Source: Mizuhopecten yessoensis
Lineage: Eukaryota
Reading direction: 5' to 3'
DNA: 64,000 bases
Assembly (NCBI RefSeq): GCF_002113885.1
Contig: NW_018404300.1
Location: 330,652 to 394,651 of the forward strand
Shown: one piece after another, positions 14,183 to 54,401 of the stretch
Layout of the letters: the number at the start of each line of letters is the position of its first letter
Position numbering within the stretch: the first letter of the stretch is position 1
Notes under the pieces: model-generated
Database searches by the model: none
What the model saw: only the letters and a program-made list of their open reading frames with translations
What the model was told of the DNA's origin: nothing
Program-made: the position numbers and the translations under genes

Positions 14183-15475
14183 TGTACCTGTGTAGTTCAC
14201 TGACTCAGATAGCTGTGAGGATAGTGTACCTGTGTATTCACTGACTCCGATAGCTGTGAGGATAGTGTCCCTGTTTAGTCACTGACTCCGATAGCTGTGA
14301 GGATAGTGTTCCTGTGTAGTTCACTGACTCCGATAGCTGTGAGGATAGTGTTCCTGTGTAGTTCACTGACTCCGATAGCTGTGAGGATAGTGTCCCTGTT
14401 TAGTCACTGACTCCGATAGCTGTGAGGATAGTGTTCCTGTGTAGTTCACTGACTCCGATAGCTGTCAGGATAGTGTACCTGTGTAGTCACTGACTCCGCT
14501 AGCTGTGAGGATAGTGTACCTGTGTAGTCACTGGCTCAGATAGCTGTGAGGATAGTGTACCTGTGTATTCACTGACTCCGATAGCTGTGAGGATAGTGTT
14601 CCTGTGTAGTTCACTGACTCCGATAGCTGTGAGGATGGTGTACCTGTGTAGTCACTGACTCCGATAGCTCTGAGGATAGTCTACCTGTGTAGTTCACTGA
14701 CTCCGATAGCTCTGAGGATAGTGTACCTGTGTAGTTCACTGACTCCGATAGCTGTGAGGAAAGTGTACCTGTGTAGTTCACTGACTCAGATAGCTGTGAG
14801 GATAGTGTCCCTGTGTAGTTCACTGACTCTGATAGCTGTGAGGATAGTGTACCTGTGTAGTCTCTGACTCCGATAGCTCTGAGGATAGTGTACCTGTGTA
14901 GTTCACTGACTCTGATAGCTGTGATGATAGTGTACCTGTGTAGTTCACTGACTCCGATTGCTCTGAGGATAGTGTACCTGTGTAGTTCACTGACTCTGAT
15001 AGCTGTGATGATAGTGTACCTGTGTAGTTCACTGACTCCGATTGCTCTGAGGATAGTGTACCTGTGTAGTTCACTGACTTCGATAGCTGTGAGGAAAGTG
15101 TACCTGTGTAGTTCACTGACTCGGATAGCTGTGAGGATAGTGTACCTGTGTAGTCACTGGCTCAGATAGCTGTGAGGATAGTGTACCTGTGTAGTCTCTG
15201 ACTCAGATAGCTGTGAGGATAGTGTACCTGTGTAGTCTCTGACTCCGATAGCTCTGAGGATAGTGTACCTGTGTAGTCACTGACTCCGCTAGCTGTGAGG
15301 ATAGTGTACCTGTGTAGTCACTGGCTCAGATAGCTGTGAGGATAGTGTACCTGTGTAGTCTCTGACTCCGATAGCTCTGAGGATAGTGTACCTGTGTAGT
15401 TCACTGACTCCGATAGCTGTGAGGAAAGTGTACCTGTGTAGTTCACTGATTCTGATAGCTGTGAGGATAGTGTAC
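14183..15475. repeat. 41/42-bp minisatellite, ~31 copies
   Basis: Unit tgtacctgtgtagttcactgactccgatagctgtgaggatag. Confidence 0.97.
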
Positions 15476-22437: not shown

Positions 22438-22585
22438 GCTGTCAGTGGCTACATCTATTCTGGGATAGACCCCACCATTGTGTCACGTCTGATTCGTGAG
22501 GTGGAGGAACTACTCACACATGTGACTAACGAAAACTTCGAAGCGGCCCAGAATGCAGCACTCATATTGAAGGAGACCAATTTAG
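22438..22585 (+). CDS. BIVM: BIVM-family protein, coding exon 2
   Basis: tttacag|AVSGYIYSGIDPTIVSRLIREVEELL...KETNL, TAG|gtaggt; phase 0/1 matches exon 3. Confidence 0.75.
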
Positions 22586-22880
22586 GTAGGTACAACAGAC
22601 CAGCCTCGTTCTGGATAGACCACATACTAAAGGAGGCATGCATGAGGTAAGTATAACAGGCAGCCTCATTCTGGATAGACCAGGTACTGAAGGAGGCATG
22701 CATGAGGTAAGTATTACAGGTTACAGGTAGCCTCATTCTGGATAGACCAGGTACTAAAGGACACATCTATAGGTAGGTAAACAATGTCACTATTCTGGAT
22801 AGGACACACATTTTACTAATGGATGCAAATTTACATAGAGAAACAAGGTCAGCCTCGTTCTGGATAGGACTCATATCGCA
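22586..22880 (+). repeat. Degenerate ~60-bp repeat copying the exon end and donor site
   Basis: gcctc(g/a)ttctggatagac...aaggag...ag|gta(a/g)gt units, about 4-5 copies. Confidence 0.75.
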
Positions 22881-26416: not shown

Positions 26417-27319
26417 GGTCTTTAGCAGAAGGAATGAGCAAATCAATAGAGCGACAACAGAGATCCTACTACGATGGAAATATCCCTTCAAACAGGAAGT
26501 CAGGTTCTCGTCTTCAGGGTCCTAGAATTGATGTTGGGTCAAGAAAACAAGCTTATCGTCAGGGAAACACACCAAATAGGTCATCAGCTGATCTCACCAA
26601 ACTTCCACCAATCAATGGTTTCCGCAACGAAAAACCAGACAGTCGGGAGACGGGATCAACTGTTGTGTTTACAGATGGTGGCGGAGATACATCCCCCAGC
26701 AAAGGTCAGCATGGAGGTCATGTATCACGCCCTCCGTATAGTCCGACAAAAATGTCTGTTTCCAAGGACAAATCCCCTGCCAAGGATCAAAGGTCAGGGG
26801 TCACATGTAATGACATTGTGGCCATGACCTCAAACTATGTTCCAAGTGATGACAAGTCCACCATCAGAGATCAAAGGTCAAATATTGCATCATTGGTCAA
26901 TTCTGTCCAGCTTGAAGACAAGCCACAAGATGATGAAAGGTCAAAGTTCATCAGGGATCAAAGGTCAAGTATACCATCAATGATTCCTTCATTTCAAATG
27001 GATGCCAAAACAAAAGAGGAAAGGTCAAAGGTGAAGGAACAAAGGAAAAGTTTGATTCCATCATTCTCCAGTGAGGATAGGTCAAGGTCAAAGGATTCCA
27101 AATATAGCTCAAGTAACAATCATGGCGAGGAGGGATCGAAGGTTGAGGCGGTGAAGGCAGAGGTGGGAAAACCTGAACCAACAAAGACAGAGCCTAAAAC
27201 CTTGTCACCAAAGAAAACAGTTGAAGGGGTGGAACCAGAAGTTGGGGAGTTCAAGTCAGAAATAGCATGGGACGTTGATGTATCTGACATCACCCCTAGC
27301 AGGAAAATCAGGAAACCAG
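26417..27319 (+). CDS. BIVM: BIVM-family protein, coding exon 3 (disordered S/K/R-rich, ending EIAWDVD)
   Basis: ttacag|...CCAG|gtaatt; long ORF 26434-; phase 1/1. Confidence 0.88.
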
Positions 27320-27725
27320 GTAATTTATGGCAAAGTGACCAAGTTGTATGTGCATCTGTGCATGTAATTCAGGTGATAATATTAGCATAGCAAGTTGTTA
27401 CTATTTAGAAATATCTACATGCTAAAGCTTTTGGAAACTGTTTGGGTATTTCCATCTTATTCAATGTTTGAATAATCTGGGACGACCAATCGTGACATGA
27501 TGTCAAATTAACTATTGGCAGAATCCTAATATTTTCCGATTAATGTTCAGTGCCAAATAAGAAGTAAAATGATGTAGATTTAACGTTTTCCAGCTTTAGT
27601 CCTGTTTTAAGTAACTAGGTGCAGCAAACATTCTTTGTCTTGTGAAACAGTTATGTCTTCTTCTTCTTGACAAATGTAACATGTGTAAACTAATATGACT
27701 TCAATCAACATGTTTTGTTTTAAAG

Positions 27726-28060: not shown

Positions 28061-29503
28061 TGTCAGACCCGATTGTTTTGATTCAGACTGACTTGTAGGT
28101 TTTGGACATGAACAGTTTGTCAGTCCCAATTGTTTTGATTCAGACTGACTTGTAGGTTTTGGACATGAACAGTTGTCAGTCCCAATTGTTTTGATTCAGA
28201 CTGACTTGTAGGTTTTGGACATGAACAGTTGTCAGTCCCAATTGTTTTGATTCAGACTGACTTGTAGGTTTTGGACATGAACAGTTGTCAGTCCCAATTG
28301 TTTTGATTCAGACTGACTTGTAGGTTTTGGACATGAACAGTTGTCAGTCCCAATTGTTTTGATTCAGACTGACTTGTAGGTTTTGGACATGAACAGTTGT
28401 CAGTCCCAATTGTTTTGATTCAGACTGACTTGTAGGTTTTGGACATGAACAGTTGTCAGTCCCAATTGTTTTGATTCAGACTGACTTGTAGGTTTTGGAC
28501 ATGAACAGTTGTCAGTCCCAATTGTTTTGATTCAGACTGACTTGTAGGTTTTGGACATGAACAGTTGTCAGTCCCAATTGTTTTGATTCAGACTGACTTG
28601 TAGGTTTTGGACATGAACAGTTGTCAGTCCCAATTGTTTTGATTCAGACTGACTTGTAGGTTTTGGACATGAACAGTTGTCAGTCCCAATTGTTTTGATT
28701 CAGACTGACTTGTAGGTTTTGGACATGAACAGTTGTCAGTCCCAATTGTTTTGATTCAGACTGACTTGTAGGTTTTGGACATGAACAGTTGTCAGTCCCA
28801 ATTGTTTTGATTCAGACTGACTTGTAGGTTTTGGACATGAACAGTTGTCAGTCCCAATTGTTTTGATTCAGACTGACTTGTAGGTTTTGGACATGAACAG
28901 TTGTCAGTCCCAATTGTTTTGATTCAGACTGACTTGTAGGTTTTGGACATGAACAGTTGTCAGTCCCAATTGTTTTGATTCAGACTGACTTGTAGGTTTT
29001 GGACATGAACAGTTGTCAGTCCCAATTGTTTTGATTCAGACTGACTTGTAGGTTTTGGACATGAACAGTTGTCAGTCCCAATTGTTTTGATTCAGACTGA
29101 CTTGTAGGTTTTGGACATGAACAGTTGTCAGTCCCAATTGTTTTGATTCAGACTGACTTGTAGGTTTTGGACATGAACAGTTGTCAGTCCCAATTGTTTT
29201 GATTCAGACTGACTTGTAGGTTTTGGACATGAACAGTTGTCAGTCCCAATTGTTTTGATTCAGACTGACTTGTAGGTTTTGGACATGAACAGTTGTCAGT
29301 CCCAATTGTTTTGATTCAGACTGACTTGTAGGTTTTGGACATGAACAGTTGTCAGTCCCAATTGTTTTGATTCAGACTGACTTGTAGGTTTTGGACATGA
29401 ACAGTTGTCAGTCCCAATTGTTTTGATTCAGACTGACTTGTAGGTTTTGGACATGAACAGTTGTCAGTCCCAATTGTTTTGATTCAGACTGACTTGTAGG
29501 TTT
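28061..29503. repeat. 56-bp minisatellite, ~26 near-identical copies
   Basis: Unit gtcagtcccaattgttttgattcagactgacttgtaggttttggacatgaacagtt. Confidence 0.98.
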
Positions 29504-30598: not shown

Positions 30599-30819
30599 TA
30601 TTATTCTCTATATAGGTTTCTTGATGAATAATGGTTTCATGAGTGCATTGTGCAGTAATTTAATATTTTCAAAAATATTCTGCCATTCATAGTGCATAGA
30701 GTGTATGTATGCATAAATTTGATGATATGTTTGTTTGTATTTCACTGACGTTACATATGTTTCAGAAAGTTTTAAGTTCTAATTTAGTGACGAGACATGT
30801 TTGTATGGTTGTGTTTCAG

Positions 30820-30924
30820 TCTAGCACCTATCACCCAGGAAGAGGCTCTCACCATTCTTGGGTTCAAACCACCATTTGACGAGATCAGATTTGGGCCGTT
30901 CACTGGAAACGCAACCTTAATGAC
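30820..30924 (+). CDS. BIVM: BIVM-family protein, coding exon 6
   Basis: [34 protein letters not shown]; phase 2/2. Confidence 0.95.
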
Positions 30925-31190
30925 GTAAGTTAACTGAAAAGAATCGTACTACATATTGTATCTTTTCTCTTTATTCAATATGAAAATAGTTGCTCTTGTA
31001 GTTATCTCCCCTGGCTCTGTAGTACTTGCTGGTACTTGGGTGATCCGATAGATTCACAATTTATAGTCATATGACACTGACTGGTAAAATATGGGGTTAT
31101 TTAACAGATTCACATAATTTCTCCATTTCAATGCTCTATTAAATAATAAGTATTATATAAGAAATGTTATGTGCTGTAGGTGTTAAATAG

Positions 31191-31322
31191 AGAGTAAGAA
31201 CCATTTAACTGGCTGGTTGTGCTGATGTGTAGGGAGAGTAAGAACCATTTAACAGGCTGGTTGTGCTGATGTGTAGGGAGAGTAAGAACCATTTAACTGG
31301 CTGGTTGTGCTGATGTGTAGGG
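31191..31322. repeat. 44-bp tandem repeat x3
   Basis: Unit agagtaagaaccatttaactggctggttgtgctgatgtgtaggg. Confidence 0.9.
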
Positions 31323-31572
31323 GCATAATATAATAAGGGATCCTTGTTTCTAATCATAACTTAATCATGGTTGGCTCTGTCTTTTGCTTACCTTCCCCAC
31401 TCACCCAGTATCTTCATGTCGTGTGAATTTCAGAGAACCTGATTGGAAAAATATATGCCAATGTCATGAAATTCCCCTTTCTGCTATGAATGATACATGA
31501 GCATTCAATATGTTGTTTTATCACAACAAAATGCAGAAGAGCTTTGCAATAAGATTTTATAGAAAATAGCAC

Positions 31573-31737
31573 CTGATCACGTGTAAGGCAGTCAGCTGAT
31601 CACGTGTAAGCCAGTCAGCTGATCACGTGTAAGGCAGTCAGCTGATCACGTGTAAACCAGTCAGCTGATCACGTGTAAGGCAGTCAGCTGATCACGTGTA
31701 AGCCAGTCAGCTGATCACGTGTAAGCCAGTCAGCTGA
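31573..31737. repeat. 23-bp tandem repeat x7 containing CACGTG and CAGCTG
   Basis: Unit ctgatcacgtgtaaggcagtcag. Confidence 0.95.
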
Positions 31738-32078
31738 AGGGGTATACTTGTGGGATGACAGTGTTGAGGATGATGCAGGTGGATAGGATATGATTGATAA
31801 TCTCTATAAATGTAATTCAGCTCAGAAATAACTGTTATATCATTTTATAAACTAAAAGATCTCCAGATTTGTTGGTTTATGCTTATAAGACCTGTTTGAA
31901 TGTATTTAAACTGCACAACCACTGGAGTTTTTTTTCTATATTTTTGTTTTTGTGTTAAAATGAATGACAACAACAAACTTCAAGATCCCTGGTTCATACA
32001 TTGGTCAAAATCTCTGCAGAGCTTACATCATTTTTCTCAAAATAAAATGTATTATATTGAACATGTATATTTTGTCAG

Positions 32079-32306
32079 ATGGTTCAAGAAGCTAAACGAC
32101 CACTTTAAAGTGCGTGGGCAGAGCTACTTTACATACAAACCTCACGGTAAGGACAAGACCTTTGGGATGACATCAGACATGGCCCTCCAGGCAATTAAAA
32201 AAGGACTGCAGGACCCCAACACAAGCTACATCTACCACTGCCAGAATCATTACTTCTGTCCAATCGGATTTGAGGATACACCCCTAAAAGCTGAGGAGGC
32301 TTACAG
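32079..32306 (+). CDS. BIVM: BIVM-family protein, coding exon 7
   Basis: [13 protein letters not shown]...YKPHGKDKT...[17 protein letters not shown]; phase 2/2. Confidence 0.95.
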
Positions 32307-33029
32307 GTAATGAACACTTTTGTACCCTAGGTATATACAGTATATACCACTACTGATACTTTGTCCCAAGGATTTTAAGGATACACCCCTCAATGCTGTG
32401 GAGGCTTACAGGTAATGAACACTTTTGTACCCTAGGTATATATATACCACTCCCAATACTTTGTCCCAAGGATTTTAAGGATACACCCCTCAATGCTGAG
32501 GAGGCTTACAGGTAATGAACACTTTTGTACCCTAGGTATATACAGTATATACCACTCCCGATACTTTGTCCCAAGGATTTTAAGGATACACCCCTCAAAG
32601 CTGAGGAGGCTTACAGGTAATGAACACTTTTGTACCCTAGGTATATATACCACTCCCGATACTTTGTCCCAAGGATTTTTAAGGATACACCCCTCAAAGC
32701 TGAGGAGGCTTACAGGTAATGAACACTTTTGTACCCTAGGCACATGTATATATATACCACTCCCAATACTTTTGTCCCAAGGATTTTAAGGATACACCCC
32801 TCAATGCTGAGGAGGCTTACAGGTAATGAACACTTTTGTACCCTAGCTATATATATACCACTCCTGATACTTTTGTCCCAAGGATTTTAAGGATACACCC
32901 CTCAAAGCTGAGGAGGCTTACAGGTAATGAACACTTTTGTACCCTAGGTATATATATATACCACTACTGATACTTTTGTCCCAAGGATTTTAAGGATACA
33001 CCCCTCAATGCTGAGGAGGCTTACAGGTA
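32266..33029 (+). repeat. ~100-bp tandem repeat spanning the exon 7 end and donor site (8 copies of gcttacag|gta)
   Basis: aggatacacccct..gctgaggaggcttacaggtaatgaacacttttgtaccctag repeated. Confidence 0.95.
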
Positions 33030-33682
33030 TGGTACATCGGTACTCCAGTTATACCTGTATATAGCTATCACCACAATCAGTTCTGAGGGGTTCGAGGGTA
33101 CAACTGTTACAGCTTTGATATATGTGGCAGTTGGTTATGAGGCATTCCGTTTTACTTATGTCAAATATGGTTTGAGGATATGCACCCAAGTCTAAGGAGG
33201 CAACTATTAATAGGTCACTGTCAGAACCAGTGCCACATCAGTTATCTGATTGTACTAAATATACCATATTCATTTACCAGAGTTTGATCTCCAGTTTTCC
33301 TAAACTGGGAATGATCCAGAAAGTGTCAGAGATTAATGCTATCTTCTCACACAATCCGACCTCAAACGTTGGTTCTAGTTAACCAGTGGTTAGGAAAACA
33401 TTTAAAATATGAATATAACTAAATAAAGACGTCCAGAAAGATATCATTTCCTTGCTGTAGATCAGTTGCGACAAATCAGATCAATGTGTTATTGTGTTTT
33501 GAGGATTAATTTTGCTTTGTTTAGCATTTGTTTCTTCAACAATTAAATTTTTTCACTAACCACTGGTTAAAGTTAACCAACTTTGAACAACTGGAGTCTG
33601 ATGTCCTGAAAAACACAGAAGGATGATAATGTTACGTGTCTTGTGATATTGGTATTTATGTTGGCTGTGTTAACTATTTCAG

Positions 33683-33766
33683 TGGACCCCTTGCCCAGGA
33701 GGACGTAGAAACACATATTCTGATTGGAGACTGTGCAATCAAACACCCAAGTATACACTGCAAAAA
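33683..33766 (+). CDS. BIVM: BIVM-family protein, coding exon 8
   Basis: GPLAQEDVETHILIGDCAIKHPSIHCK; phase 2/2. Confidence 0.93.
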
Positions 33767-34386
33767 GTAAGTTTGTAAATGAGTTACAAAATGATAAAAG
33801 GAATACTGATTGACTGATTATTCTTTGTCTGACAAAGGTGTACCTCACACCTAGTCATTGAAATGTGAGTACAGTGGATTAAAATGTATTAAAAACCTCT
33901 TACCTATTTAATGAAATGACATGCAAAGTCACATTGGAATCACACTTGTTATTTGAATATTTGTGAGCTATAATTATGCTTCCCCCACCAAAGTTAGTGA
34001 GGTACTGGATTCAGGTTGTCTGTGTGTCTGTTCGTCCTTAGATGGAATCTTTTCTGGACAGCTCCTAACTTTTCATTGATATTTCTTGAAACTTTTGTGG
34101 AAGCTATATGCCCCCTTAGAAAACTGATAGCCAAGTCTTCTTTATTCTGATCTACATCTACATTATGGCCAGAACAATGGTCCTGAAGCTTCTTTACATA
34201 CTTTTACGGAATTGCTACATATTGTCAACATTTGGTATAACTACATTTCTGTTGACCTTGCTTTGGCAATTTTATGGGGGAGCTTTTATATTTATAGTTG
34301 CGTGTAGTTGTGTGTTGAATTCACAGTTAGTCAATGGTAAATAATTATGTAGAAGTGGTCACAATATTGTAATTATTTTGTTGTAG

Positions 34387-34849
34387 ATGGGAGGATATTT
34401 CCATCGACCTGAATTGTGTCAATCCTGAGTACCTTAACATTCGTCGCCTGCAAGAAGGACTGCAGAAACGCAAGGCCAAAAAGCCTGGTGGTAATCTTCA
34501 TTGCATCATGGCATTTCGCAAAAACAATTTTCAGTCTATTCACAGAACTCATATCCCTGTGTTTGGGGGTGGGGCTAAAACAAGAACACGATCAACATCA
34601 AACCAAGCACTAAATGTTTCACCGGGCACACACGTTTCTACAACAGGGACCCCCATTATGCCAATGTCTGCTGACACAACTGCCAAACTTGGTAATAATA
34701 ATGAAATCTCAATGGGAGTGAATCATCATTCTGAAGTGTTGCCTAGCAACGGATTTGGTGACGGTGAGCATCCACAGGTAGGAGATGTAAAGCAGACAGA
34801 GGAGGAGGAGGAGAATATGTGTTCAGAGGATGAAGAGGATGATGAATAA
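34387..34849 (+). CDS. BIVM: BIVM-family protein, last coding exon
   Basis: WEDISIDLNCVNPEYLNIRRL...GGNLHCIMAF...EDEEDDE*; total spliced CDS 2472 nt. Confidence 0.93.
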
Positions 34850-37549
34850 GTCGTGAATTTTTGGGAACATTTGTTTTATAAATGTGTATTATACAATTCT
34901 GTTATTGGTTTACAAGACAGTATGATCTGCTGATTTTCCAAACTCATTAGCTCCTACATCTCTGGTAAATGTATTTTGAAATATATTTGTTTGAATAGCG
35001 AGCTATCTTAATGTAAATTATTATGGTTTAACCAAAAGTAAATTTTGGGTTTCTTAAGAGACAATGTTTACAATACCTGGTATTTACTACAAAAACTTAA
35101 AGATTGGTAATTTATAGTCCTGTTATATTTTTGATACATGTTGAGTTGTACAGTTGTCTGGTGACAAATGGTAACTATTGTGGTCATATCACAATGAACC
35201 GGGGATGTTTTCATTGATCGCATTCTAAACAGTTTGACCGATTGAACCAGTTGTTTGTTTATGAAATAGGGATGGACTTGGTTATCTGATGTTGCGTTCT
35301 GATGAGCCTTGATGAAGACTTCTAAGGCCTGTATCTGCATTTATCCCAGAAATATCACATATAGAAAAAATGGCCTTCTTGTTTGTTGGCAAAAAGAAAC
35401 AGGCCCATTGTCTTTAAAGTAGATAATTTTTATTTTAAAAGTTGCCAGTTCAACTTGAAAGCCGATACACTGTATAGAATGAAAAAGTGGATATTAAATT
35501 CAACATATATTGGATGTTTCAAAAGGGAATGGAAAATTTAATTCAGTGAAATGAAGATAGTTATGTGTGTGAATACATTTCTTACATAGAATTTTGCTAC
35601 AGTGCTGCATATTGATCTGTTAGATATTTACAAGTGATTTGAGGTGAATTATAAGTGTGCTAAAAGTGATATCTTAAAGATCCCTGTACCACTGCCAAAG
35701 TCTATCTAAACACTGGTTACTGGTTTTTCTGGCATGATATAGCTATTATAAATCATTTCTGGAACGAAAACTATGCCTTATGATAAAGTTGAAATAAACG
35801 AAATACAATCAGTGTACTGTGTAAAAACAATAATAGCAGACCTAGACCAGGATTCAAACAGCCTAGATCTCTGTTGTTCTACTATCGCTCTAACTGACTG
35901 AGCTACCTGGTCAACAGAAGTGTCCTTCCCAACTGTGCTACAGTTAAATCCAGAACGAAATTAAGGGGAGACAACTGTATATACGAAAAGCCAGAGTGCA
36001 GTGGGACAGGGACCCTTAACACAGTGAAGATATCACAAATGCGATGATATTCAGAAAAATATTGAATCTCAAATATATGCAAAATTAAGGGAATATAATG
36101 AAGGAGAACAAGTGTGACATGTTTTCATTGATTGATATTTCTTGAATTTTTTTTTTTTACATGAATAAGGACAAAAACTTACTAAAGGCCAAGTTGTAAA
36201 TTTTTTGCTGCCTGAATATTTTTACAATTAACTGTGATAAAATGTACAGCTAGTGTAGTGTTTTGTCTGTAATATTGTTTTTCTGATTGTAAGCCTCATT
36301 GATACTCGAGCTCTAACCCACTAGGTTCACCAGTTGTTGACCTTTAGATGATGAAACACCATCTACAGTCACTCCAAAATCTCAGTTCGTCTCATTACAC
36401 AGTGGAATCTGTGTAAACAATCTGTTAAAACTGACACTAGGAAATTGTTGTCAACGAGTCAGGTATCATTGAGTAAAGTTTTTACTGCGATGTAATTAAC
36501 AAGGGAGGCAACTGGAACAATTTGCAGGTACAAAATTTTACCACTGCTTAACATGTGTTGTCAATATTAGACACAAAGGAATACGTGTAATGAAAATCAT
36601 CATTCTGGTGAAATTTTATAATCTGTATAAAACATAAATCTACAAATTCTAAGTTCCCGGTAATATGTGTTCACCTGATCACACATTTTGTTTATGATTT
36701 ACTGAAATGCACACCTTGCTTTACAATCTACATACAAATAAACATAGGAAACATACACTGTACATATACATCTGTAATAATATTAAGCATTAATTGAAAA
36801 TATGAATGTTTTAACAAATAGGTCGAACCTAGTATTTCATTTTTGTTATTATATGTTTATATTTTTGTTTATGTGTTATATAAGATCTCACAGTGACAGC
36901 TATGCTTGATGAATTGCTGTCAAGGTCTGAGAAAGTTTAACGGACCTGTCTCGGGCACAGCATCAATCATCAGGAGAAATCTGTCTTCCCGACTGGAACC
37001 CAGGACTTTAGATTATAATTAAGAGTTACTCAATGACTGAAAAGTTAAATAAAAAACAAATACTAATTGAAAACTTTCACCTTAAGTATAATCGGTAAAA
37101 AATATATCAATCAATCATCAATTAAGGAAAGAATTCTGTTTTGTCAATCAATTTTCTGACAGAATGCTACTTCAAGAATGAATAAATGATATATTCTAAA
37201 ATAGATGAAAAAGAGCTGATAATTTGGGGCACTGCATCTTTGATGGGGCCCTAATTACAGAATTAGGAGAATTTTAAAGTAGAACCTGAAGCGGAAGAAG
37301 TGGGGTCCAGCCTGATCTGTTTATTGATTTTGAACATGGAATCAAGCAGCTTGATACCAAATGTGTCTCCTTGTTTGATCACTATATTTAATTCCTATTC
37401 TACAAATTCTCTACATAGAGATGTTACACAACAGTTATATATCTATATACATTGTATTTCACATTATCATTTACATAGCTCATTCATATATAGTAAAGTC
37501 TTGTCTTGTTTATGTAAGTTAACATAAAATGGTTTCAAAAGTGATGTGT

Positions 37550-53969: not shown

Positions 53970-54102
53970 GTGTTCATCAGTAATAGTGCTAAGTACAGTG
54001 ACACAGGACATCCATTTGGTTACCTTAAGGCCAGTAGTGCTCTCTCCTGTGTCAACCTCTTCATCATGCCATACAACTACCCCGTACTGCTGCCTCTCCT
54101 TG
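53970..54102 (+). CDS. INTS6: INTS6 exon 10
   Basis: VFISNSAKYSDTGHPFGYLKASSALSCVNLFIMPYNYPVLLPLL; phase 0/1. Confidence 0.96.
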
Positions 54103-54401
54103 GTAAGTCTGAGTAGGGCAACAGGCGAAACAGGTAGGAATGGGGCCTAGAATTAGGGAATAAAGTTAAATATAACCTGGTACAGACGCCTCCCTCTCCT
54201 TGGTAAGTCTGAGGAGGGTGACAGGCAAAACAGGTAGGAATGGGGCCTTGAAGTGCAGTATAAAGTTAAAGCAAGATTACTCAATGATGCAGTTGCTGAT
54301 AAGTCTGAACGGGGCTAAAATTGAAGGAATAGAGCCTAGAAGAAGGGGATGAAGCTTAACCAACATTTCCTGGTTAATATTCTTCTCATTGGTAAGTCTG
54401 A

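What the first reader, a model, noticed from the sequence alone, without database searches (positions are those of the whole stretch)
32266..33029. Tandem array made from an exon end plus its donor creates seven exon/mini-intron units; one is in frame
Seen: the last ~40 nt of BIVM exon 7 and its donor (GCTTACAG|gtaatg) are copied seven more times. Each copy is preceded by tactttgtcccaag, so the array reads as ~55-65-nt GT..AG mini-introns alternating with 41-nt pseudo-exons. One copy (32674-32715) has an extra T, making it 42 nt, phase 2/2, and encoding [13 protein letters not shown] in frame, between the putative catalytic His and Asp. Inference: a route to exon/intron birth or decoy-donor regulation; the 41-nt units would shift the frame and trigger NMD.
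Basis: partly seen in the sequence, partly recalled or inferred. Interest (0 to 1): 0.7.

Follow-up and report, generated by a model that had tools for sequence, protein, structure and literature searches.

The report
Silent splice-donor minisatellite in scallop BIVM
An intron of a scallop gene begins with seven extra tandem copies of the preceding exon's end and its splice signal; this is a known kind of repeat ("mirage"), and the RNA data show only the first, authentic signal in use.

Summary
A ~105-nt tandem array (32269-33029, 7.4 copies) starts inside a BIVM exon (32079-32306). It places seven more copies of the exon end plus donor in the intron: six read CAG|GTAATGAA as the authentic site does, the last CAG|GTATGG. 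The AG-to-GT stretches are 41 nt except one of 42 nt (32674-32715), which is in frame ([13 protein letters not shown]).

One correction. The copied exon part is about 74-81 nt, not ~40.

The functional reading is not supported. In two raw RNA-seq runs the only joint leaving the exon is 32306->33683 (11 and 13 reads, level with neighbouring joints). Depth is zero across 32352-33665. mRNA contigs of two further runs carry the same joint. NMD-sensitive or rare isoforms below about 10-15% remain possible.

The unit occurs nowhere else in the 988-Mb genome. It shows three age layers: an old relic at 33152-33201, a diverged progenitor, and a recent amplification. The architecture matches amphioxus "mirages" and the human F7 intron-7 VNTR. 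Earlier notes of this scan report the same kind many times elsewhere in this genome. Verdict: real, a new member of a known kind, most likely neutral.

The parts
32079..32306 (+). Its last ~74-81 nt (from ~32227/32233) are the exon half of repeat unit 0.
   Evidence: Joints 30924->32079 and 32306->33683 appear in four RNA runs. Translation is WFKK...[25 protein letters not shown]. Homologues carry PF28452 BIVM.
32307..32344 (+). Authentic donor (GTAATG) and the first ~38 nt of the intron, which form the intron half of unit 0. It is identical to the intron half of young unit I2 and matches the other young units except at two substitutions (I4, I5) and in the TA-rich tail.
   Evidence: The donor is used in all junction reads.
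32345..33026 (+). Seven young repeat units. Each holds a ~67-68-nt exon relic (YIYH..YFCPKDFKDTPL[N/K]AEEAYR), then CAG|GT, then a 31-39-nt intron half. The units are 96.5% identical to each other in the exon-derived part and 82% identical to the real exon.
   Evidence: TRF; alignments; tblastn with heterologous BIVM proteins hits units at 32642-32716, 32746-32823, 32850-32924 and 32953-33027.
32674..32715 (+). The single 42-nt AG..GT unit (one extra T). It is in frame with the exon phase and would insert [14 protein letters not shown]. No RNA read supports its inclusion.
   Evidence: zero RNA depth and no joints.
33027..33090 (+). Diverged intron half of the last unit, with donor GTATGG. This edge unit is not homogenised with the others.
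   Evidence: An alignment anchored at the donor beats 99.3-99.9% of shuffles; alignment A1.
33152..33201 (+). Old decayed copy of the exon end (TTACTTATGTCAAATATGGTTTGAGGATATGCACCC..GGAGGC). Its donor is destroyed. It resembles the real exon more than it resembles the young units.
   Evidence: Local score 41 against shuffle mean 17.9, sd 2.3, max 31. 44/68 identical to the exon copy, 59% to the young units.
33683..33766 (+). Next exon (GPLAQEDVETHILIGDCAIKHPSIHCKK). It is the acceptor for the authentic donor.
   Evidence: Joints 32306->33683 and 33766->34387; translation; tblastn.

Best explanation
This is a donor-spanning minisatellite of the 'mirage' type. A tandem duplication of about 110 nt covered the last ~80 nt of a BIVM exon and the first ~35 nt of the following intron. 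One copy drifted to about 82% identity with the exon, with a net 6-nt loss, and was later amplified to seven units by slippage or unequal exchange. The units stay homogenised (96.5% identity). An older relic decays further downstream. The duplicated part lies 3' of the first donor, so the whole array is intronic as long as the first donor is chosen. The RNA data show that it is. The seven downstream donors and the AG..GT pseudo-exons are silent by-products, not a regulatory device. Shown here: the anatomy, descent from the exon, uniqueness in the genome, and exclusive use of the first donor at the available depth. Inferred: the duplication and homogenisation mechanism, near-neutrality, and the reason the first donor wins (exon definition or 5'-to-3' selection, as demonstrated for human F7).
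For: The array and its register are established. Each unit still encodes a relic of the conserved BIVM peptide: tblastn E about 1e-4 per unit with frog, turkey, shark and snail proteins, and anchored nucleotide alignments beat 99-100% of shuffles. Identity layers are 96.5%, 82% and 65%, and the old relic stands about 10 sd above shuffles. The unit occurs only at this locus in the 988-Mb assembly, so it is not a transposon. For RNA, the only joint from this exon is 32306->33683, with 11 and 13 raw reads against 14/13 and 16/13 for the flanking joints. Depth is zero at 32352-33665 in both raw runs. mRNA contigs of 1981 and 1878 nt in two further runs carry the same joint. Independent contigs longer than one unit (32498-32643 and 32796-32926) show the tandem arrangement in other samples. 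The window carries 14 or more minisatellites and two more donor-spanning arrays. In the literature, mirages (PMC3087553, PMC3902484) and the F7 IVS7 pseudo-sites (PMC1557585) are likewise silent.
Against: RNA depth is modest (~24 canonical junction reads), and the tool lists a joint only from 3 reads. Use of a downstream site in up to roughly 10-15% of steady-state mRNA would be missed, as would isoforms removed by NMD or confined to unsampled tissues. The pseudo-acceptors have pyrimidine content as good as the real ones (12-13 of 17 against 9-11 of 17). Six pseudo-donors are identical to the real donor, so nothing in the sequence forbids their use. Copy number in the assembly was not verified with long genomic reads.
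Confidence: 0.8

Rival explanations
1. Some transcripts use a downstream donor or include 41-nt units. These shift the frame, or stop at once at AGG TAA if the exon is simply extended, and are removed by NMD. The array would then tune BIVM output.
For: On paper the signals are good: identical donors, AG preceded by a pyrimidine-rich stretch, and a CTGAT branch-like motif in some units. NMD would hide such products from steady-state RNA-seq. F7 pseudo-sites are functional when the first site is disabled (PMC1557585).
Against: No joint and no read depth in the array in two raw RNA-seq runs, and none in two contig sets. Junction counts equal those of the neighbouring introns, so there is no visible loss of product. 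Mini-introns are only 57-66 nt and their AG is AAG. The 'acceptor' is decayed coding sequence. The same architecture is silent in amphioxus and human.
Confidence: 0.12
2. Nascent alternative exon. The 42-nt unit 32674-32715 is occasionally included and adds 14 residues ([14 protein letters not shown]) between the conserved HCQNH and ILIGD motifs.
For: It is exactly in frame. The intron position is an insertion-tolerant spot in at least one predicted isoform: turkey X1 has 24 extra residues here. Ebner et al. proposed this route for mirages.
Against: Zero RNA support. Inclusion requires skipping three identical upstream pseudo-donors. The extra T is a single slippage in a T run, and one in-frame unit among seven units is close to chance expectation.
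Confidence: 0.04
3. Assembly artefact: the array, or its copy number, was created by mis-assembly.
For: Ebner et al. report a mirage that appears aberrantly assembled in a draft genome. This is a fragmented assembly of 82,659 contigs. All DNA runs hold only ~0.75-0.78 of the sampled words.
Against: The units differ by unit-specific substitutions and indels, unlike collapsed or duplicated reads. Contigs from independent samples span more than one unit. 14 DNA runs from five studies (P1-P5) hold most of the stretch.
Confidence: 0.03

Closest known systems
Amphioxus 'mirages': minisatellite-like tandem duplications of exon-intron boundaries (Adh3, globins BflGb6/BflGb9, TnC, PGBD5). See PMC3087553 and PMC3902484, which cite Canestro et al. 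2002.
   Same: The tandem units span an exon-intron boundary. Unit sizes are similar (10-160 bp there, ~105 bp here). The authentic copy sits at the array edge and is excluded from homogenisation. The inner units evolve in concert. Regular splicing is undisturbed. AG/GT signals are present in the copies.
   Different: The host is a bivalve mollusc, not a cephalochordate. Length polymorphism and somatic instability were not tested here. This array shows three age layers and one in-frame unit.
Human F7 intron 7 37-bp VNTR with 5' pseudo-sites (Borensztajn et al. 2006, PMC1557585)
   Same: The first element spans the exon-intron boundary. The authentic donor is followed by several donors identical in sequence, and these stay silent. 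Only the most upstream site is used.
   Different: The unit here is about three times longer and carries ~70-80 nt of decayed coding sequence. Scanning-type selection was shown by mutagenesis in F7 and is only inferred here.
Intron gain by tandem duplication across an AGGT proto-splice site (Rogers model; Hellsten et al. 2011, PMC3265369; potato RdRp, PMC4974935). These are listed and only their abstracts were seen.
   Same: A tandem duplication provides a ready-made donor and acceptor pair.
   Different: In those cases the duplicate lies within an exon and the new intron is actually spliced. Here the duplicates lie inside an existing intron and no new splicing event is seen.

Membership tests
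Mirage (exon-intron boundary minisatellite) | Tandem repeat whose unit spans an exon-intron boundary, with the authentic boundary as one edge unit | tested here: met
   The boundary is verified by RNA joints.
Mirage (exon-intron boundary minisatellite) | Regular splicing is not disturbed and the copies are absent from mRNA | tested here: met
   only 32306->33683 (24 raw reads and 2 mRNA contigs), with zero depth on the array. The detection limit is about 10-15%.
Mirage (exon-intron boundary minisatellite) | Concerted evolution of inner units, with edge units excluded | tested here: met
   Young units are 96.5% identical to each other and 82% to the exon copy. The intron half of the last unit is diverged.
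Mirage (exon-intron boundary minisatellite) | Length instability or copy-number polymorphism | tested here: inconclusive
   Contigs from other samples carry variants inside the array (A>T at 32599, +TA behind 32641) but cannot count units. The neighbouring 23-bp array does show a 6-unit deletion allele.
F7 IVS7-type 5' pseudo-site VNTR | Downstream donors identical in sequence to the authentic donor | tested here: met
   Six of seven are identical, CAG|GTAATGAA, with identical flanks; the seventh is CAG|GTATGGTA.
F7 IVS7-type 5' pseudo-site VNTR | Pseudo-sites are functional but outcompeted by 5'-to-3' selection of the first site | not testable with these tools
   This needs minigene mutagenesis of the first donor.
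New intron or exon by tandem duplication (Rogers model) | The duplicated donor/acceptor pair is actually spliced in mature RNA | tested here: not met
   No joints between units and no pseudo-exon coverage.
NMD-coupled poison exon or decoy splice site | A detectable unproductive isoform, usually conserved across species | tested here: inconclusive
   No isoform was seen in steady-state RNA.
BIVM protein family (PF28452) | Sequence match of the host exon to BIVM proteins | tested here: met
   12 of 12 hits carry PF28452, E down to 3.6e-32. The [14 protein letters not shown] motif is invariant. The local Pfam copy gave no hit.

The most novel reading that the evidence does not exclude
Scallop genes may acquire donor-anchored minisatellites far more often than random tandem duplication predicts. 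That would point to a mutational process coupled to 5' splice sites or to transcription. Arrays such as this one, with an in-frame 42-nt unit flanked by usable signals, would then be the standing stock from which new exons or unproductive-splicing switches are drawn. The evidence here does not exclude low-level, NMD-masked or tissue-specific use.
Probability: 0.08. Interest if true: 0.6.

Novelty: new member of a known kind. Interest (0 to 1): 0.3.

Why it matters
This locus alone matters little. It is one more silent donor-spanning minisatellite, and the idea that such arrays could seed introns or exons is already published for amphioxus.

Two points give it some value. First, it is a clean natural test of 5' splice-site choice in a mollusc: eight donors, seven of them identical, about 100 nt apart, and only the first is seen in use. 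That agrees with the F7 result in mammals. Second, I found no paper in the held library that describes mirages in molluscs. This window carries three such arrays, and earlier notes of this scan report many more in the same genome. A genome-wide, annotation-based test of enrichment at donors would therefore be worth doing.

There is also a practical point. Gene predictors may place spurious exons, or the wrong donor, in such arrays.

Tried and rejected
1. Transposon or dispersed-repeat origin. The 105-nt unit matches only this array in the whole assembly.

2. A further decayed unit at 33091-33151. The local score is no better than shuffles, so it is not claimed.

3. Further relics at 33202-33682, or upstream of the exon at 31900-32078. 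Not significant.

4. The large upstream ORF 26434-27387 as a handle on full-length BIVM proteins. It gave no hits and no Pfam family.

5. The local Pfam-A copy on exon translations. Nothing useful came back. The family was identified through the word search instead, and the protein atlas gave leads to BIVM and Peptidase_C78 at scores 0.87-0.92.

6. Orthologous loci in other molluscs through the look-up of encoding contigs.

7. The big protein search (search of protein representatives). I left it unused, because the word search settled the family.

Exons were handled one by one, by reference.

9. Recursive splicing at CTTACAG|GTAATG. I considered it, but the tract upstream of each CAG is purine-rich and the intron is only 1.4 kb. 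It is unlikely and cannot be tested with steady-state reads.

10. Enrichment of arrays at donors within this window. My rough estimate sums the unit lengths of the TRF arrays (about 1150 nt) and multiplies by an assumed donor density of at most 1 per kb. That gives about one donor-spanning array expected, against three observed. This is suggestive but not significant from one window without annotation.

Full report
**Observation**

Tandem Repeats Finder reports one array at 32269-33029 with period 105, 7.4 copies, 91% matches and score 1220. An alternative period-205 description scores 1320. The repeat finder places eight copies 99-107 nt apart.

The motif GCTTACAG|GTA occurs eight times. The last exon-like bases are at 32306, 32411, 32511, 32616, 32715, 32822, 32923 and 33026. 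Six downstream donors read CAG|GTAATGAA exactly as the authentic one does. The last reads CAG|GTATGGTA.

Each copy is preceded by ..GTCCCAAG|G. The AG-to-GT stretches are 41, 41, 41, 42, 41, 41 and 41 nt. The intervening GT..AG stretches are 64, 59, 64, 57, 66, 60 and 62 nt.

The exon is read from 32080 as WFKK...EEAY and ends with two bases of a split codon. The next exon supplies the third base and continues GPLAQED. The 42-nt unit 32674-32715 therefore reads AG+G, then [13 protein letters not shown], then AG+T, which is in frame. A 41-nt unit shifts the frame. Plain extension of the exon past the donor reads AGG TAA, an immediate stop (direct reading).

**Host gene and genome**

All 12 hits of the word search with the ORF that contains the exon carry Pfam PF28452 (BIVM). 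Several are named basic immunoglobulin-like variable motif-containing protein. [14 protein letters not shown] is invariant among them, and the intron falls after ..AY in the ORF-type hits as well. The protein atlas adds leads to BIVM and Peptidase_C78 clusters.

The assembly has 987,588,634 bases in 82,659 contigs. Earlier notes of this scan call it a scallop. From memory, those figures fit the Yesso scallop draft assembly. That is a recollection, not a test.

I built no joined exon model, so the label "exon 7" is unverified. RNA joints do fix these exons..-29741 (approximately, from a loose end), 30818-30924, 32079-32306, 33683-33766 and 34387 onwards.

**What the unit really is**

An alignment anchored at the pseudo-acceptor shows that the 38 nt before each CCCAAG align to exon bases ~32227-32267. 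This beats 99-100% of shuffles (0-20 of 2000).

Independent support comes from tblastn. BIVM proteins of frog, turkey, shark and a snail hit the real exons and also four to five array units, over 25-28 codons each, with E about 1e-4. The units read YIYH(SQ/S*/Y*)YFCPKDFKDTPL(N/K)AEEAYR. The exon reads [27 protein letters not shown].

Each unit consists of 67-68 nt of exon relic (74 nt in the authentic copy, counted from TACCAC, plus a few more codons upstream) and 31-39 nt of intron start. Its length varies in a TA run that itself descends from tac-atc-tac.

**History**

- The seven copies are 96.5% identical to one another in the exon-derived part, but only 82% identical to the real exon. They share the same indels, a net loss of 6 nt. 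They descend from one copy that had already drifted, and were amplified later.
- The intron half behind the authentic donor matches the young units: identical to unit I2, and differing from the others only at two substitutions and in the TA tail. Homogenisation therefore reaches the donor and the last ~20 nt of the exon. The coding part upstream is kept intact, presumably by selection.
- The intron half of the last unit (33027-33090) is a diverged version of the same sequence. An alignment anchored at the donor beats 99.3-99.9% of shuffles.
- Further downstream, 33152-33201 is an old relic of the exon end. It scores 41 against shuffles of 17.9 +/- 2.3 (max 31). It is closer to the real exon (44/68) than to the young units (59%), and its donor is destroyed.
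- The stretch between them (33091-33151) is not significantly similar.
- The unit occurs nowhere else in the genome, so this is local duplication, not a mobile element.

**Is it used?**

Twenty public runs of the same organism label hold the stretch. Fourteen of them, guessed to be DNA runs (listed as DNA? or ?), hold at least 0.75 of the sampled words and come from five studies.

I laid two raw RNA-seq runs and the contigs of two further RNA runs on 30600-34950.

| Joint | X23 reads | X24 reads |
|---|---|---|
| 30924->32079 | 14 | 13 |
| 32306->33683 | 11 | 13 |
| 33766->34387 | 16 | 13 |

- The only joint leaving the exon is 32306->33683. The tool lists it as 32303->33680, with the cut movable by 3.
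- Its read counts are level with those of the flanking joints.
- Depth is exactly zero in every bin from 32352 to 33665 in both raw runs.
- No variant letters appear at the positions that distinguish the exon end from its copies.
- mRNA contigs of 1981 and 1878 nt in the other two runs carry the same three joints.
- Nearly all reads that lie only partly on the stretch are accounted for by the upstream exon junction at 30818.

Three caveats apply. There are only ~24 junction reads. The tool lists a joint only from three reads. NMD was not blocked. Use below roughly 10-15%, or use confined to other tissues, stays open.

**Is the array real DNA?**

The units carry unit-specific substitutions and indels. 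Low-depth intronic contigs from independent samples cover 32498-32643 and 32796-32926. Each is longer than one unit, and the second spans two successive pseudo-exons. Their k-mer depth (10.6 and 15.1) exceeds that of the single-copy intron around them (about 2-5), as expected for collapsed repeats.

**Mechanism**

A tandem duplication that spans a donor leaves the upstream exon joined to the first donor and puts everything else into the intron. It is harmless if the first donor is chosen. Duplications inside exons are removed by selection, so minisatellite-prone genomes should accumulate exactly this geometry.

This window holds 14 or more minisatellites. Two further donor-spanning arrays are present: 22584-22761 (60-nt units ending GAG|GTAAGT behind the exon ending at 22585) and 54090-54270 (100-nt units containing TTG|GTAAGT).

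My rough estimate expects about one such array in the window against three observed. That is suggestive, not significant. It is an inference without annotation.

Why the first donor wins is inferred, not shown. Exon definition across the 228-nt exon is one candidate. The 5'-to-3' selection demonstrated for F7 is the other (PMC1557585).

**Comparison with what is known**

Tandem duplications of exon-intron boundaries were named "mirages" in amphioxus Adh3. They were later found in amphioxus globin, TnC and PGBD5 genes. They do not disturb splicing, they show concerted evolution with the edge units excluded, and they were already proposed as a source of new introns or exons (PMC3087553; PMC3902484).

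The human F7 intron-7 37-bp VNTR has its first element across the exon-intron boundary and silent identical pseudo-donors.

This array meets every feature of these kinds that could be tested here. Searches of the held library found no report of mirages in scallops or other molluscs. That is a statement about this library only.

Earlier notes of this scan describe the same kind at many other places in this genome, and pointed me to the mirage and F7 literature. I checked that literature myself.

**Verdict**

It is a new member of a known kind, most likely a near-neutral by-product of minisatellite turnover.

Noticed in passing
window 22438-22761: A second donor-spanning array in an upstream gene. 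The exon 22438-22585 (AVSGYIYSGIDPTIVSRLIREVEELLTHVTNENFEAAQNAALILKETNL by direct reading) ends TTTAG|GTAGGT. It is followed by 2.8 units of 60 nt, each ending GCATGAG|GTAAGTAT. The exon has no Pfam match, and its use in RNA was not checked.
   Followed up: partly
window 54090-54270 (decayed copies to ~55013): A third donor-type array. Two 100-nt units are 86% identical, each with CTCCTTG|GTAAGTCTGAG. Weaker copies lie at 54304 and 54969, the latter 665 nt away as if an insertion separated it. TRF does not score the array.
   Followed up: partly
window 31573-31737: A 23-bp minisatellite (7.2 copies) in the upstream intron is polymorphic in copy number. A contig of run X15 skips 31573-31710, which is 138 nt or 6 units.
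   Followed up: partly
window 33365-33584: A MITE-like element in the same intron, with 42-nt inverted arms at 33365-33406 and 33543-33584, 76% complementary. Many different contigs of X15 and X17 break at 33547-33584 into unrelated flanks, as expected for a dispersed repeat.
   Followed up: partly
window 28061-29503 and 14183-15475: Two large, very homogeneous minisatellites: 56 nt x 25.8 copies at 99% identity, probably inside a BIVM intron, and 42 nt x 31 copies at 92%. Neither was examined for exon-boundary origin.
   Followed up: no
window 32153 and 32196: Expressed polymorphisms in the BIVM exon. A>G at 32153 is at the second codon position, Asp to Gly by direct reading. T>C at 32196 is at the third position. 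Both are at intermediate frequency in the raw RNA runs and fixed in the contigs of X15 and X17.
   Followed up: no
P0012 versus P0011 (turkey BIVM isoforms), alignment A2 columns ~158-181: The predicted turkey isoform X1 carries a 24-residue insertion exactly at the intron position after ..KAY, where the scallop array sits. It is only a database prediction.
   Followed up: no
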